DNA of 63,786 bases, counting the filler, from Octopus bimaculoides (taxonomy: Eukaryota), in assembly GCF_001194135.2 (NCBI RefSeq). It is 7 parts of 7 records of this genome, joined end to end, with 100 filler letters (N's around TTAATTAATTAA, not from the genome) between each part and the next. Parts side by side here need not be neighbours in the genome. Positions count along the whole stretch, not along the records: positions 55,378 to 61,007 come from NW_026334859.1; 6 more parts are not named here. One strand, given 5' to 3'. Positions within the stretch are counted from its first letter, which is position 1. The number at the start of each line of letters is the position of its first letter. The notes under the pieces were generated by a model. The model made no database searches and had not been told where the DNA came from. It saw only the letters and a list, made by a program, of their open reading frames with translations. A program made the position numbers and the translations under genes. Of the stretch, positions 55,378-61,007 are shown one piece after another.

Positions 55378-55975
55378 ATATACATATACATACATATATA
55401 CACATATATGCATACATATATATACACACATACATACATATATACAGATATGAATATATACATACATATGTGCATGTATATATATATACATACATACATA
55501 CACACACACAAACATGTATATAAATACATAGTGAAACTATTAAAACTGAAAGTATTATCTCACATTACAATGTTATTGTTTCACTTTTGACATGTAAGAC
55601 TGAAAAAGTGTAAGAGATAAGAGATTACTCCTGGCTCGCATTGGGCAAGAAGTTGAAAATGTTTTGGCCTATGACATTGCATGTACCCTAAATAAGGCAT
55701 ATGTAAAAGTTGAATGAAATCAGTTGGGTAGTTCTCGTGTTTTAGTGATACACACATACAGACAAATATTCTCAGTTTTATATATATATATATATATATA
55801 TAAATTATACAGACACTATCACATTTTCATCCACACCCATACAGATATTAACACACGCTCTGCCTCATATAGAAGCAGAGTGAAGCAGAGTTTGAGAGAG
55901 AGATGGAAGAAATTAATTAAATATTTAGAGAGTTAGTGTCAATGAAAGTGTATTAACAACACTGATCCCACTTAC

Positions 55976-56047
55976 AATGCTCTTAAACTGGGAAGATTTT
56001 CGAAAGTTCGTTCTCCAATGCTCGGGATTTTATTATGTTCAAGGTAC
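55976..56047 (-). CDS. 72-nt LRR exon (third in transcription order) of an extracellular LRR protein
   Basis: ttttatgttgcAG / TT|GTAAGT; phase 2-2; (L)YLEHNKIPSIGERTFENLPSLRA(L) fits LxLxxNxIxxIxxxxFxxLxxLxxL. Confidence 0.9.
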
Positions 56048-56391
56048 CTGCAACATAAAATGGAGTTGAAAAGAACTTGTATAGAACAGGTTCGTGATAA
56101 TGTATATCATTTTGTCAAAACAATTAAATGGATGAATAACAGATGTAGAAGGAAGCAAGAAGTACAAAAGGAGAAAGAGGAAGAGGAAGGAAGAGAATGA
56201 GGAAGATAAGAAAAAGTAAAACAAGTAAAAAGAGAAGAATAAAAAGACAGAAAAAAGAAAGAAAAATGACAGAAAAATAAATGGGGTGAATTAGAAAACT
56301 GTGCAAAGTGGTTGTAGAAGGGAAGCAAAAAGGACAAGAAAATAATGCAGACAAGAAGAAGAAGAAGATAGAGGATCGAGAGGAGAGGAAA

Positions 56392-56493
56392 ACGGGGAGG
56401 AGAGGAATACGGGGAGGAGAGGAATACGGGGAGGAGAGGAATACGGGGAGGAGAGGAATACGGGGAGGAGAGGAATACGGGGAGGAGAGGAAT
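56392..56493. repeat. 17-bp tandem repeat (acggggaggagaggaat) x6
   Basis: Perfect units seen directly. Confidence 0.95.
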
Positions 56494-56719
56494 GGAGATG
56501 CATTAGAAAAAACTACGAAAGCAAGAACCAGAATGGGAAAGAAAGGAGAAGTAGAAAAAAGGAAAAGAAAAAGAATAAGAAAAGGCAGAAGACTGAAAAG
56601 TGAATAAGCTGTTGATAAAGAAGCAATGAGTGAATATTAATAAGAAGGATAAAAAGAATATAAAATTGAAAACTACTGTCACAAGTACAAATATTTATAT
56701 GTGCACAGTGCTGCCACTG

Positions 56720-59520
56720 AACAACATGATGGGATTAAATCCCGTTCCAATCTCCTATTTCTGAATGCCCAAAGTTTATGCAACAAGATACACCTTTTTG
56801 ATTCCTAAATCAAAAGTATTGACCCCGATTTCATCACAGTCACAGAAAAATGGGCACACTGTGATGGTAATTTTAGCATAATTGGTTACAGCTTGTTTCA
56901 CAAAGACCATGCTAATCATGGTGGAGTTGGCATAATAATCTATATTTGGTCAAACTTTTCAATAATTCCTTGTGATGATCTGAATAAATCACAACACAAG
57001 GCACTCTTTTCGAACTATGCATTAACATGTCAGCACTGATACTTGGAGTTGTCTATCGCCCATCAAATTACCATCAAGGCGCACAACTTTTGAAATTCTC
57101 AGGGCTGCATCTAGGAAATTATTTTTTCATTGCTGGTGACTTCAACTACCCTGAAATTGATTGGGCAAATTTACGTTGGCTGCAAAGCACAGGCGATTTC
57201 CTTGCTGTAGTGCTGGATGCAAACGAGTACCAAGTCGTCACCTCCCCCACAAGAGGTAACAACACTTTGGACCTGTTCTTTACCACCACTCCTGAAACTG
57301 TTATCAGAGTTACTACCAAGGAACCTCTAGGCAACTCCGAACATGTTATGATCATTGCCAATGTGTCCCTTATAGGCAGAAACAAGAAACACCACCACCT
57401 CCAAACCACTCACTTTGACTAAACACAGCAGACTGTAACTATTGCCGTAATGTGTTACGACGCCCAAACTAGTTTGAATTTTACGAGTTCAGGGACGTCA
57501 AAACTGTTTTTCAGAATATCCACAGTACAATCTGGGCTGCATGTGAAGCATCAGTACTACGCAAACATTCTAAAAATAAAAAAGTGCAATTTGGGAGACA
57601 GCTTAGAAGAGATGAAATATAGACAGCTTAGAAGAGATGAAATATAGACAGCTTAGAAGAGATGAAATATAGACAGCTTAGAGCAAAAGATGCAATTAAT
57701 CATCCAACCATCTCAAGCAAATGACAAAAAAGGCAGTACTTGAGTTTGGACAATGTATAACAACCAGCCCTGACAGCAAAGTGTTCTGGAAATATGCACG
57801 TTCGAAGCAGGGATCTCACTCTCCAGTTGGTCTTCTTTACAACCACCACACAGATCGGATCACTGATGACCCCAAGGAATGTGCCGTGCTTATTGCTGAA
57901 TGCTGTGTTAGCATTTTTACTGTTGAAAATTCAAATGTACCTTCTTCACCAACTCTGAGAGCAAATTCCAAAACATCTGTGAAATTCACATGCGCAATGC
58001 TTTGATCACACCTCAAGAATAAGTGCAACTATGCCTTTCTTGGTCTTGATGGTGTTGCTTATTTGCTTCTCAAATGTGGTGGGTTCTTTCTTTTACACCA
58101 GCTTTCATTCTTCTTTCAATTTTGCCTTGACAACTGGAAAATTGGAAAATTGCCAGTGCTGTTCCCCTTTTTAAAAAAAGTGGTCACACATCATCTGTTA
58201 ACTACCGTCCAGTCTGACACAGGACTCCATTACCAAACTGATAGAGTCTTGTGTTAGAGAAAGACTCTGGAACGTTTGGAGCTCTCACAGCCTTATTCGA
58301 CCCCAACAATTAGGATTTCTCCTTAACTCCAGCTGCTGTAGTCAACTCAAGTTTCTTGGCATCACCCAAGTTACTGATGGCAGCTCATGGGTGGATGTTA
58401 TTTACTTTGACTTCGCTAAAGCCTTCAATTCTGTTCCACACAAACAGCACATGGCAAAACTTTCTGCAATAGGTGTGAAAGATGATCTCTATAACTGACT
58501 GAAGTCCTTCATTCTCAGTCAGAAAGATGTATTCACAGTTCTAGGAAATTATTCTTCACTCTACAAGATGACCTCTGGTGTACAACAGGGATATGTACTT
58601 GAAACCCTACTATTTGTTGCATATATTAATAACATAGGTGCCAACTTGAGAAATGTTTTAGTGTTGAAATATGCAGATGACATCAAGCTGTACCTCAAAA
58701 TAAAAAGAACAGACCCTATGCGTCGACACAAAGCAACAATGGATCTCTGACTGGCTACTCAAGCTAGTTGTGGACAAGTGCATCACCATACATTTTGGGA
58801 GGAAAAACTCAACCATTACATACTTCTTCAACAACACCAATCTAAAGAAGTCTTCTGGTGAGCATGGTCCGGGTATTATTGTAAACAGCGATCTGCGTTA
58901 GACAAACCACATCTCTAAGATTGTCAAGAAGGCTGAGGGTGTCCTAGCATTACTTAGTAAGACCTTTGTCAGCCACTCTCCAGCTATCTATTTAAAATTG
59001 TATATGACAATGGTATATCCATATTTAGAATTTTCATCGCCAGTCTAGGACCCCTATCTTGCTCAGCATATAAATCTCCAGGGAAACTGTTCAGAAACAT
59101 GCAACAAAATGAATACCCGTTGTCAGGCATCTACCATACTCTGAACGTCTTGCTTCCCTGGGCATGGACACATTGAAGCTCAGACGTCTGGCAACTAACT
59201 TGGTAGACACCTACAAGATTATCCACCATCTTTCCAACAACAACCTTGAATCCTTTTTTTGAATTCCATATATCAAACGCGCCTGGACATGCTCACAAAA
59301 TCAAAAAACAACACAGCACCCATGACTTTGGAAGCATTTTTTCATGCTCAGAATTGTTGAAGCATGGAATAAACTACCCACATCAGCTGGTAGCTGTTGA
59401 AACACTACATCCTTCAAAACTTCCATGCTTCCTGAAATCCACCAACAATACATCTGATGGCATTTTTCGTAGTTCTAGTGCACCAGAGCACTGTATACAA
59501 CAATTTCTTTCATATAAGAT
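56720..59520 (+). mobile_element. CR1-group LINE ORF2 (APE + RT), decayed, in the LRR-gene intron
   Basis: LLFLNAQSLCNK...ILGVVYRPSN...IAGDFNYPEIDW...TSPTRGNNTLDLFFTT...VIYFDFAKAFNSVPH...SGVQQGYVLETLLF...KYADDIKLY; (ATAC)-type tail. Confidence 0.9.
57596..57682. repeat. 25-bp tandem repeat x3.5 inside CR1 ORF2
   Basis: agacagcttagaagagatgaaatat repeated perfectly. Confidence 0.95.
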
Positions 59521-59716
59521 ACATACCTGCATACACACACATATGTAACCAACATCACATTCACACACATATTCACTTGTATGCACATTCACATACTCTC
59601 AACGCACATATAGAGAGAAAGTGAGAGGTTTCGAGAGAGATAAAAATGAAAAGGAAGGCATCATGAATTTAGAAATATATCGTCAATGGAATAGTATCAA
59701 CATTGTTCAGACTTAC

Positions 59717-59788
59717 AAATGTTTTAAGTTTGGAAGGTTTTGGAAGGATCCATCTTCAATAACCATAATATCATTATTACTCATATAT
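59717..59788 (-). CDS. 72-nt LRR exon (second in transcription order)
   Basis: tttttggttacAG / TT|GTAAGT; phase 2-2; (L)YMSNNDIMVIEDGSFQNLPNLKH(L). Confidence 0.9.
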
Positions 59789-59951
59789 CTGTAACCAAAA
59801 AAGAGTATGTATAGTTTTGATGAAGGGAGAGAAGAAACCAAAATAAAAGACAGGGAAGAGAAGAGAAAATTGGTGATAAGGGATATCAAAAAGAAGTAGA
59901 AAGGTAAATTGAACAAAGATGAAGAATAAGAGAAGAGAACAAAGGAAAAGT

Positions 59952-60046
59952 GAAGAAGAAGAAGAAGAAGAAGAAGAAGAAGAAGAAGAAGAAGAAGAAG
60001 AAGAAGAAGAAGAAGAAGAAGAAGAAGAAGAAGAAGAAGAAGAAGA
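59952..60046. repeat. (GAA)n microsatellite
   Basis: Seen directly; a second long (GAA)n/(CAA)n tract lies at ~60640-60750. Confidence 0.95.
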
Positions 60047-60371
60047 AAGAATGGTAGTAGTTTGCAAAAGGACAATGAGAGAAAAAGAAGCAATGGAAGA
60101 AGATAAATGAGAATGAGAAGAAAAAGAATATAAATTAAATAGTCACAAATACACACAGACCCAAATGTGTTTATGCACATACATACACAAAATTTCACAC
60201 ATCCAAACACACTCACATTCACAGTCACACTCAGATTCACACGTACTTACATACACACATATTCATACACTCATACAGTGATATACTGTGGAAAGGTAAA
60301 TAGAGAGAAAAAAGTAGGATGCAAAGGTATTAAATAATTAGAAATATATTGTCAATGAAAGAGTATCTTAC

Positions 60372-60443
60372 AATTGCTGTAAAACTGTGAGATCTTTGAA
60401 AGCCCCTGCTCTAATAGTCGTGATTTTATTATACTTTATATAT
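60372..60443 (-). CDS. 72-nt LRR exon (first in transcription order within the window)
   Basis: cttttgtcttacAG / TT|GTAAGA; phase 2-2; (L)YIKYNKITTIRAGAFKDLTVLQQ(L). Confidence 0.9.
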
Positions 60444-60722
60444 CTGTAAGACAAAAGTGAGCTGATAAACATTTATACAGAGCAAATTAGTGATATTAGA
60501 TATTGTGGCTAAACAATGATATGAAGGAAGAGAAATAAAAGAAGTTGATAACGACGATGATGATGACAATGTTAATGAAAACGATGATAATGATAACTCC
60601 TGAATGAAAGACGGTACAGAAGAAAGTGCAGGCAAGTAAAGAAGAAGAAGAAGAAGAAGAAGAAGAAGAAGAAGAAGAAGAAGAAGAAGAAGAAGAAGAA
60701 GAAGAAGAAGAAGAAGAAGAAG

Positions 60723-60753
<31 letters not shown>

Positions 60754-61007
60754 AAGAGAAGAAAGAGGAAAAAGGAGGAGACGAAGAATAAAAAGGGGAA
60801 AAAGATGATGTGGGATAAAAATTTTGAAGTTAACGCAAACAAAAAAAGAGAAAAGAAGAAAGGGAAAGAAGTAAAATGGGAAGTAGAAGAAATGAAAAGA
60901 TTCAATAAAATCTGGCAGAAAAGAAGAGTAATTACAAGACAGATAAAGAGAAATTGAGGAAAATTCGAAAAAGTAAAAGAAAGCAAATAATAATAATAAT
61001 AATAATA

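What the first reader, a model, noticed from the sequence alone, without database searches (positions are those of the whole stretch)
55880..60540. LRR receptor growing by tandem duplication of whole exon cassettes
Seen: three 72-nt, phase 2-2 exons each encode exactly one 24-aa LRR with quite different residues, and their introns are homologous. The donor-side motif gtcaatg(a/g)aa..gtat occurs at 55938, 59682 and 60351. About 80 bp of acceptor-side sequence aligns between the 56047 and 60443 exons. Each exon has a long GAA-rich (plus-strand) tract on its acceptor side and an AC-rich tract on its donor side. A 2.8-kb CR1 later separated two cassettes. Established: one-LRR-per-exon phase-2 structure occurs in LGR/RXFP/GRL101-type GPCRs and other ectodomain LRR proteins, and symmetric exons can be skipped or duplicated in frame. 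Inference: a microsatellite-bounded exon cassette array that could vary in copy number or splice combinatorially, as in a diversified sensory or immune receptor. Family identity cannot be fixed from three exons.
Basis: partly seen in the sequence, partly recalled or inferred. Interest (0 to 1): 0.7.

Follow-up and report, generated by a model that had tools for sequence, protein, structure and literature searches.

The report
Octopus LRR exon-intron cassettes, tandemly duplicated
Three consecutive 72-base exons of an octopus leucine-rich-repeat gene, each encoding one repeat, arose by an old tandem duplication of a whole exon-plus-intron unit; this way of building LRR genes is already known, and nothing here shows that the array is still growing or is spliced combinatorially.

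Summary
On the minus strand, 60372-60443, 59717-59788 and 55976-56047 are 72-nt exons with AG/GTAAG splice sites and phase-2 introns on both sides. Each encodes one 24-residue LRR (Pfam LRR_8, E 4e-22). The flanking introns are homologous. Collinear blocks of 97-222 nt align at 67-70% identity, well above shuffled and positional nulls. The same order of tracts recurs in every unit. A decayed 2.83-kb LINE (56690-59515, antisense, endonuclease + RT) was inserted later, because its two flanks match contiguous sequence in the uninterrupted neighbouring intron. The LINE is 82% identical to an Octopus bimaculoides copy, so the host is an octopod.

The duplication is old: exons are 58-62% identical, dS is saturated and dN/dS is about 0.4. 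I found no excess of replacement changes, no selector/docking-type RNA pairing, and no transmembrane or signalling domain in the piece. The family cannot be fixed, because the best matches are generic extracellular LRR arrays at 49% identity or less. Arrays of 72-bp phase-2 LRR exons made by cassette duplication are already described in gonadotropin/LGR receptors, Slit, brown-algal ROCOs and Tetrahymena. This is an ordinary new member of a known kind.

The parts
60372..60443 (-). Exon C, first in transcript order: 72 nt, phase 2-2, one LRR (YIKYNKITTIRAGAFKDLTVLQQ)
   Evidence: acceptor ttttgtcttacag|A, donor TT|gtaaga
59717..59788 (-). Exon B: 72 nt, phase 2-2, one LRR (YMSNNDIMVIEDGSFQNLPNLKH)
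   Evidence: acceptor ttttttggttacag|A, donor TT|gtaagt
55976..56047 (-). Exon A: 72 nt, phase 2-2, one LRR (YLEHNKIPSIGERTFENLPSLRA)
   Evidence: acceptor ttttatgttgcag|G, donor TT|gtaagt
60324..60367 (-). Conserved donor-side intron block of cassette C (RNA sense GATACTCTTTCATTGACAATATATTTCTAATTATTTAAT). It starts 5 nt after the 5' splice site because C lacks 17 nt that A and B have.
   Evidence: (family D9)
59655..59698 (-). Conserved donor-side intron block of cassette B. It shares 21 of 23 bases with C in the core TTAGAAATATATYGTCAATGRAA (plus strand).
55911..55954 (-). Conserved donor-side intron block of cassette A
60444..60529 (-). Acceptor-side intron block of cassette C, homologous to that of cassette A
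56048..56136 (-). Acceptor-side intron block of cassette A, homologous to that of cassette C
60520..61007 (.). Purine-rich tract (81% R on the plus strand, so pyrimidine-rich in the pre-mRNA) upstream of exon C. It includes (GAA)~27(CAA)9 at 60639-60750 and runs off the end of the piece.
59810..60130 (.). Purine-rich tract (87% R) of the C>B intron, with a pure (GAA)32 at 59952-60047
56140..56660 (.). Purine-rich tract (84% R) of the B>A intron, with a 17-nt minisatellite of 6.7 copies at 56380-56493
60140..60290 (.). AC-rich tract (GU-rich in the pre-mRNA) on the donor side of exon C
59516..59620 (.). AC-rich tract on the donor side of exon B. It aligns to 60178-60262.
55740..55870 (.). AC/TA-rich tract on the donor side of exon A
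56690..59515 (+). Decayed, 5'-truncated CR1-like LINE, antisense to the gene. It was inserted between the purine-rich and AC-rich tracts of the B>A intron.

Best explanation
The piece is an internal segment of an octopod gene, transcribed from the minus strand, that encodes a 24-residue 'typical-class' LRR solenoid of the kind found in extracellular proteins. Each repeat has its own 72-nt exon bounded by phase-2 introns. The intron splits the codon of the fourth-position leucine as TT|R.

The three exons and their complete introns descend from one ancestral unit of roughly 0.65-0.9 kb. In transcript order that unit reads: exon, about 45-110 nt of donor-side block, a GU-rich tract, a long pyrimidine (UUC-rich) tract, and an acceptor block. 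The unit was copied head to tail, most plausibly by unequal crossing-over (inferred).

The copies are old. Their scaffold residues have been kept by purifying selection, while the solvent-exposed x positions have drifted. A CR1-like LINE later landed antisense in one intron and decayed there.

Shown here: exon structure, LRR identity, paralogy of the introns, secondary insertion of the LINE, octopod origin.

Inferred: unequal crossing-over as the mechanism; that the exons are expressed and constitutively spliced; that the donor-side block, which is better conserved than the exons, is kept as a splicing element.
For: - Exon and splice anatomy.
- LRR_8 at E 4e-22.
- Only these three LRR units occur in the piece.
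- The introns are homologous against dinucleotide shuffles and against a positional genomic null.
- Collinear HSPs of 97-222 nt.
- The junction between the purine tract and the AC tract is also homologous between introns, at about 78% over 76 nt.
- dN is 0.42-0.51 against a saturated dS of 1.1-1.4. All eight scaffold positions are kept in all three exons.
- The LINE carries APE and RT domains over three frames with many stops. Its flanks are contiguous in the paralogous intron. It is 82% identical over 1.8 kb to an O. bimaculoides copy ending at the same ...TTTCTTTCATAT terminus.
- Precedents for cassette duplication of 72-bp or 90-bp phase-2 LRR exons: PMC11378527 and PMC6564038.
Against: - There is no transcript evidence.
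- No protein in the 5.8-billion-sequence collection shares even three 5-residue words with the spliced peptide, although that collection holds the O. bimaculoides proteome. The exons are therefore in no annotated gene model there.
- The acceptor flank of exon B shows no detectable homology.
- The similarity pattern is mosaic. A-C are closest in the exon and the acceptor flank, whereas B-C are closest in the donor flank. A single simple duplication history does not explain this.
- With only three units, the rest of the gene and the array length are unknown.
Confidence: 0.8

Rival explanations
1. This is a currently dynamic, microsatellite-bounded cassette array in which the number of cassettes varies between individuals or species, or exons are chosen combinatorially, diversifying a sensory or immune receptor.
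For: - All exons are symmetric, and any junction reads TT+A/G = Leu, so skipping or duplication stays in frame and in register.
- The (GAA)n tracts of cassettes B and C are 96-100% identical over 77-100 nt. That gives a substrate for unequal recombination that would add or remove exactly one cassette.
- A 30-40-nt donor-side block is better conserved (82-87%) than the exons (58-62%). Regulated exons often show this pattern.
- Brown-algal ROCO 72-bp LRR exon arrays are alternatively spliced (PMC11378527).
Against: - No young copies are present. Exons are 58-62% identical and synonymous sites are saturated.
- dN/dS is about 0.4, with no excess of replacements.
- Pairing of the donor block with the acceptor flanks was not consistently better than shuffles; only 1 of 6 tests reached z -3.
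- The donor regions show no stable structure.
- No receptor domain lies in the piece.
- No population or transcript data are available.
Confidence: 0.1
2. A dead or unexpressed LRR exon array, either a pseudogene fragment or a leftover of a decayed gene. It would be open in frame only because the exons are short.
For: - No protein in the collection shares words with the peptide, although O. bimaculoides proteins are present.
- The locus is heavily invaded by microsatellites, minisatellites and a LINE.
Against: - All six splice sites are canonical.
- All three 24-codon frames are open in sequence that is about 65-70% A+T.
- Every LRR scaffold position is retained although synonymous sites are saturated, and dN/dS is about 0.4. 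This implies purifying selection over most of the time since duplication.
Confidence: 0.12
3. The intron similarity near the exons is maintained by selection on a shared cis-acting splicing element (or by intron-limited gene conversion), not only inherited from the duplication. On this reading the donor-side block ATAC.CTTTCATTGACA.TATATTTCTAA is a functional intronic element present once per cassette.
For: - The block is 82-87% identical between cassettes whose exons are 58-62% identical.
- B and C share 21 of 23 bases in its core.
- It keeps its position 5-22 nt downstream of the 5' splice site despite a 17-nt indel.
Against: - Homology is not confined to the block. It extends through the AC tract, through the junction of the tracts and, for A-C, through about 90 nt of acceptor flank. 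Common descent of the whole unit is therefore needed anyway.
- The identity contrast rests on 30-40 nt.
- No RNA structure or pairing partner was found.
- No binding factor can be named from the sequence.
Confidence: 0.3

Closest known systems
Glycoprotein-hormone receptor and LGR4/5/6-type LRR ectodomain genes, which have one LRR per ~72-bp exon and all introns in phase 2
   Same: Exon size is 72 nt, there is one 24-residue typical-class LRR per exon, and introns are phase 2 on both sides. Phase 2 in the gonadotropin receptors is stated in PMC11378527, citing Koo 1991. Among solved structures, LGR4 gives the best single-stretch match (36 bits over 70 residues).
   Different: No 7TM, hinge or LDLa domain can be seen in the piece. 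IGFALS, LRIG1, LRRC15 and TLR13 score about as well. In those old vertebrate genes no similarity between the introns of neighbouring LRR exons is known to me (own knowledge), whereas here it is still detectable.
Slit genes, which have modular LRR exons
   Same: LRR exon modularity with potential for in-frame alternative use of LRR exons (PMC6642158, citing Little et al. 2002).
   Different: The Slit-defining LRRNT/LRRCT-capped four-domain layout, EGF and LamG domains are not observable here. There is no specific sequence affinity.
Brown-algal LRR-ROCO genes (Ectocarpus, Saccharina)
   Same: Arrays of exactly 72-bp phase-2 exons. Each encodes one LRR from nucleotides 3-71 plus split junction codons. 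The arrays were built by duplication and shuffling of exon-intron units (PMC11378527).
   Different: They come from a different kingdom and are cytosolic ROC-COR proteins. Alternative splicing and positively selected concave-face sites are documented there, but neither is shown here (dN/dS about 0.4).
Tetrahymena 90-bp-exon LRR gene arrays
   Same: [quoted passage not shown] Expansion of exon/intron units there is attributed to unequal crossing-over, and LINE-like elements sit next to the units (PMC6564038).
   Different: The exons there are 90 bp and the LRR is a different type. Thousands of genes include very young, near-identical units. Here the three units are old and the single LINE is an ordinary secondary intronic insertion.
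Dscam-type mutually exclusive exon clusters and lamprey VLR cassette assembly
   Same: Tandem arrays of homologous cassettes encode a variable binding surface.
   Different: No docking/selector pairing was found. These cassettes carry ordinary splice sites and would be joined in series, unlike VLR donor cassettes, which are copied somatically. There is no evidence of alternative use.

Membership tests
Leucine-rich repeat, typical 24-residue class (Pfam LRR_8, PF13855) | LxxLxLxxNxIxxIxxxxFxxL consensus with a 24-residue period, scoring above the Pfam gathering threshold | tested here: met
   LRR_8 scores 78.1 bits against a cutoff of 27, E 4.2e-22. The scaffold L/I/N/F positions are kept in all three units.
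One-LRR-per-exon phase-2 gene architecture (gonadotropin receptor/LGR, Slit, ROCO type) | Each repeat lies on its own exon of about 72 nt, all flanking introns are in the same phase (2), and splice sites are canonical | tested here: met
   Three exons of exactly 72 nt, AG...GTAAG, with 1 + 69 + 2 codon geometry.
Tandem exon-intron cassette duplication | The introns flanking neighbouring exons are homologous and collinear, beyond chance | tested here: met
   z 5.6-11.4 for donor flanks and z 6.5 for the A-C acceptor flanks. HSPs reach 222 nt, E 8e-16. The positional null picks the homologous sites. The tract junction is homologous. The acceptor flank of B is the exception.
LGR/RXFP/GRL101-type LRR GPCR | A rhodopsin-type 7TM domain (plus LDLa modules in the RXFP/GRL101 type) in the same gene | not testable with these tools
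   The piece holds only 5.6 kb and three LRR exons. No octopus genome can be searched by DNA here. No protein containing these LRRs was found.
LGR/RXFP/GRL101-type LRR GPCR | LRR sequences specifically closest to LGR-family ectodomains | tested here: inconclusive
   LGR4 gives the best single-stretch PDB match, but IGFALS, LRIG1, LRRC15, TLR13 and chondroadherin score alike. The best matches library-wide are uncharacterised amphioxus LRR-TM proteins at 49% identity or less.
Rapidly diversifying immune or sensory LRR receptor | Excess of non-synonymous change (dN/dS > 1) at the variable positions between paralogous cassettes | tested here: not met
   Nei-Gojobori dN 0.42-0.51, dS 1.1-1.4, ratio about 0.37-0.45. 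Power is low: 23 codons and saturated dS.
Mutually exclusive or combinatorial cassette splicing (Dscam-like) | Conserved intronic RNA pairing elements (docking and selector) associated with each cassette | tested here: not met
   Duplex energies of the donor block against the acceptor flanks are not consistently better than shuffles. No stable local structure was found. A docking site outside the piece cannot be excluded.
Mutually exclusive or combinatorial cassette splicing (Dscam-like) | Transcripts that differ in cassette content | not testable with these tools
   No transcript data are available. The peptide is absent from the protein collection.
CR1-clade non-LTR retrotransposon | An APE endonuclease followed by a reverse transcriptase in one ORF2 | tested here: met
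   Exo_endo_phos_2 at E 4.7e-08 and RVT_1 at E 1.8e-15, on the plus strand, spread over three frames.
CR1-clade non-LTR retrotransposon | Phylogenetic placement of the RT within CR1 rather than Jockey, L2, RTE or another clade | not tested
   There is only indirect support. The nearest named proteins are O. bimaculoides 'mobile element jockey-like' RTs at 71-81% identity. A C-terminal LPYSERLASLGMDTLKLRRLATNLVDTYKI segment resembles the CR1 ORF2 tail (own knowledge). CR1 families are reported in octopus genomes (PMC8967140, PMC13282606).

The most novel reading that the evidence does not exclude
These three exons are the visible part of a large, so far unannotated octopod LRR gene or gene family. 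It would be built from dozens of microsatellite-flanked single-LRR cassettes. Recombination between the near-identical (GAA)n tracts would change the cassette number between individuals, and a conserved intronic element just downstream of each 5' splice site would regulate which cassettes are included. That would be an animal counterpart of the Tetrahymena and brown-algal LRR exon arrays, generating binding-surface diversity.
Probability: 0.07. Interest if true: 0.7.

Novelty: new member of a known kind. Interest (0 to 1): 0.27.

Why it matters
As it stands, this is a clean textbook-style example in a cephalopod of how LRR solenoids lengthen. A symmetric phase-2 exon is copied together with its intron, and enough intron homology is left to see the duplication unit and to time a LINE insertion relative to it.

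It would matter more under two conditions. The first is that the full gene turns out to be a long, lineage-specific, copy-number-variable array. The second is that the conserved donor-side intron block proves to be a splicing control element repeated once per cassette. Both can be tested directly with existing octopus long-read assemblies and Iso-Seq data.

Tried and rejected
1. Finding the gene.
- The search for homologous proteins with the spliced 72-aa peptide found no protein sharing three 5-mers.
- Exact look-ups of four window ORFs in the assembly index found nothing.
- A metagenome scan for the 23-nt intron core found nothing.
- The full HMMER scan gave 41,568 LRR hits ranked by array size. 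The best window identity was 48.6%, to uncharacterised amphioxus LRR-TM proteins. These do not identify the family.

2. RNA bridging or exon-looping. I tested whether the donor block pairs with the acceptor flank of the same intron or of the same exon. Only 1 of 6 comparisons beat shuffles. The donor regions fold no better than shuffles. Rejected.

3. Positive selection. dN/dS is about 0.4. Rejected at this low power.

4. Extra or degenerate LRR exons elsewhere in the piece. There are none. A weak tblastn hit at 55640-55675 has no LRR frame.

5. Structured RNAs. Rfam gives only sub-threshold mir-297/466-type hits on the (ATAC)n microsatellite, which are artefacts. No tRNA or SINE signal was found.

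6. Chance similarity from low-complexity sequence. Dinucleotide shuffles and the positional scan exclude this. However, similarity inside the pure GAA and AC tracts carries no information on its own.

Full report
**What is in the sequence**

The usable piece is 55378-61007. It has about 35% G+C and is full of simple repeats. The gene lies on the minus strand.

Three exons of exactly 72 nt sit at 60372-60443 (C), 59717-59788 (B) and 55976-56047 (A), in that transcript order. Each is preceded by a pyrimidine tract and AG, and followed by GTAAG(T/A). Each starts with one base that completes a codon and ends with the two bases TT, so the introns on both sides are phase 2.

Spliced together, the exons read YIKYNKITTIRAGAFKDLTVLQQ-L-YMSNNDIMVIEDGSFQNLPNLKH-L-YLEHNKIPSIGERTFENLPSLRA. 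This is three regular 24-residue LRRs, and Pfam LRR_8 matches at 78 bits, E 4e-22.

The split codon is always TT|A or TT|G, which is the fourth-position leucine of LxxLxLxxN. Any exon could therefore be joined to any other without losing frame or register.

A profile built from the three units finds no further LRR unit, on either strand, elsewhere in the piece. The expected positions of the neighbouring cassettes lie beyond both ends of the piece.

- The motif GTCAATGRAA occurs at exactly 55938, 59682 and 60351 and nowhere else, against 0.08 expected.
- B and C share 21 of 23 bases around the motif.
- Local alignments of the 110 nt on the donor side are significant for all three pairs: z 5.6, 9.0 and 11.4, with none of 300 dinucleotide shuffles reaching the observed score. 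On the acceptor side only A-C aligns, over 89 nt at z 6.5.
- I also used a positional null, sliding each flank along the whole piece. The top hits for every donor flank are the other cassettes' donor flanks, and the A and C acceptor flanks are reciprocal best hits. The acceptor flank of B matches only low-complexity purine tracts.
- blastn gives collinear HSPs that run through intron, exon and intron: A 55916-56136 against C 60329-60529 (66.7% over 222 nt, E 8e-16), B 59555-59698 against C 60219-60367 (69.8% over 149 nt), and A 55923-56019 against B 59667-59760 (70% over 97 nt).

**The duplicated unit is the whole period, not just the exon edges**

In transcript orientation each unit reads:
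1. exon
2. donor-side block
3. GU-rich tract (AC-rich on the plus strand)
4. long pyrimidine tract (81-87% purine on the plus strand)
5. acceptor block.

The junction between the purine tract and the AC tract is itself homologous between the two complete introns. Window 56614-56689 aligns to 60081-60153 at about 78%.

The period is 655 nt from C to B. From B to A it is 3741 nt, which falls to about 0.9 kb once the LINE is removed.

**The LINE**

Window 56690-59515 carries Exo_endo_phos_2 (E 5e-08) and RVT_1 (E 2e-15) on the plus strand. It is therefore antisense to the LRR gene. The domain hits are scattered over three frames, with 32-51 stops per frame, so the element is decayed. It begins near the start of the endonuclease domain, so it appears 5'-truncated.

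Its RT is 71-81% identical to O. bimaculoides proteins annotated as 'mobile element jockey-like'. At the DNA level it is 82% identical over 1.8 kb to a copy on O. bimaculoides chromosome record CM046601.1. Both copies end at ...CAACAATTTCTTTCATAT, which fixes the 3' end at 59515. This also shows that the piece comes from an octopod.

The sequence left of the LINE aligns to 60081-60153 and the sequence right of it (59530-59611) aligns to 60178-60262 of the uninterrupted C>B intron.

The name 'CR1' is plausible. The C-terminal LPYSERL...LKLRRL...YKI segment resembles the CR1 ORF2 tail (my own knowledge), and CR1 families are reported in octopus genomes (PMC8967140, PMC13282606). I did not test it phylogenetically.

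**How old, and under what selection**

| Measure | Value |
|---|---|
| Exon nucleotide identity, in register | 58-62% |
| Exon amino-acid identity | 8-9 of 23 residues |
| dN (Nei-Gojobori) | 0.42-0.51 |
| pS | 0.58-0.63 (dS 1.1-1.4, saturated) |
| dN/dS | about 0.37-0.45 |

All eight scaffold positions are retained in all three units: L/M/I at position 6, N at 9, I at 11, I at 14, F at 19, L at 22, L at 1 and the split L at 4. The copies are therefore old and have been under purifying selection. Nothing indicates recent growth or an excess of replacement changes, although 23 codons give little power.

One feature stands out. A 30-40-nt donor-side block (RNA sense ATAC.CTTTCATTGACA.TATATTTCTAA) is 82-87% identical between cassettes. 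That is more than the exons, and the block stays close to the 5' splice site despite a 17-nt indel in C. It could be a retained splicing element.

I tested the idea that this block pairs with acceptor-side sequence, either bridging the intron or looping out the exon. I found no consistent signal, and the donor regions fold no better than shuffles. Its role, if it has one, is unknown.

The similarity pattern is mosaic. A-C are closest in the exon and the acceptor flank, and B-C in the donor flank. This hints at a two-cassette super-repeat or at exchange between cassettes, but three units cannot resolve it.

**What gene is it?**

This cannot be decided.

- The spliced peptide shares fewer than three 5-residue words with any protein in the 5.8-billion-sequence collection, although that collection includes O. 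bimaculoides proteins. The exons are therefore in no annotated model there.
- A full HMMER scan finds 41,568 LRR proteins. The best window identity is 48.6%, to uncharacterised amphioxus LRR-transmembrane proteins.
- Among solved structures, LGR4 gives the best single stretch (36 bits), but IGFALS, LRIG1, LRRC15, TLR13 and chondroadherin are equivalent.

The repeats are of the extracellular 'typical' class. 'Receptor' remains a guess.

**Comparison with what is known**

One LRR per roughly 72-bp exon with all introns in phase 2 is the classical structure of gonadotropin-receptor and LGR ectodomains. It is also found in brown-algal ROCO genes, where exon shuffling and alternative splicing are documented (PMC11378527). 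LRR exon modularity, including in Slit genes, is reviewed in PMC6642158. Tetrahymena has tens of thousands of equal-length, phase-2 LRR exons expanded as exon/intron units, and the authors attribute this to unequal crossing-over (PMC6564038).

The present locus fits this kind. What it adds is residual whole-intron homology in a cephalopod, and microsatellite tracts that are part of the repeated unit.

The pure (GAA)32 of cassette B and the (GAA)~27 of cassette C are 96-100% identical over 77-100 nt. They could mediate unequal exchange that adds or removes exactly one in-frame cassette. That is a reasonable inference, but nothing here tests it.

**Verdict**

This is a new member of a known kind, of low to moderate interest.

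Noticed in passing
window 56380-56493: A 17-nt minisatellite (GAGGAGAGGAATACGGG) of 6.7 copies at 98% identity lies inside the purine tract of the B>A intron. It is a recent local expansion with no counterpart in the other cassettes.
   Followed up: no
window 57596-57682: A perfect 25-nt tandem repeat of 3.5 copies (AGACAGCTTAGAAGAGATGAAATAT) lies inside the decayed LINE, between the endonuclease and RT regions.
   Followed up: no
window 59952-60047 and 60639-60750: There is a pure (GAA)32 in cassette B, and (GAA)~27 followed by (CAA)9 in cassette C. These long uninterrupted GAA/TTC runs sit at equivalent positions in adjacent cassettes and are 96-100% identical over 77-100 nt. They are a possible substrate for unequal recombination.
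   Followed up: partly
window 55540-55740: About 200 nt of non-repetitive sequence lies in the intron downstream of exon A, between two AC/ATAC-rich tracts. It has no counterpart in the other two cassettes. It shows no LRR frame, tRNA or Rfam match. Its origin is not identified.
   Followed up: partly
window 55379-55523: Rfam mir-297/mir-466/mir-3149 matches (up to 56 bits) all fall below their gathering scores (80-100 bits). They lie on the (ATAC)n microsatellite and are repeat-derived artefacts, not miRNA genes.
   Followed up: yes
window 60367-60371 versus 55955-55975 and 59699-59716: Cassette C lacks 17 nt that A and B carry between GTAAG and the conserved donor block. As a result the block starts 5 nt from the 5' splice site in C, against 18-22 nt in B and A.
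   Followed up: partly
exons and flanks of A, B and C: A and C are more alike than either is to B in the exon (alignment z 14.9, against 5.3 and 0.8) and in the acceptor flank. B and C are most alike in the donor flank. This is compatible with a two-cassette super-repeat or with exchange between cassettes.
   Followed up: no
L001 2665-5182 (O. bimaculoides CM046601.1, 30278214-30286813, reversed): A copy of the same LINE family (76-82% identical) lies immediately upstream of an annotated kinesin-domain gene. A 199-aa fragment of its RT is annotated as 'uncharacterized protein LOC106870015'.
   Followed up: no
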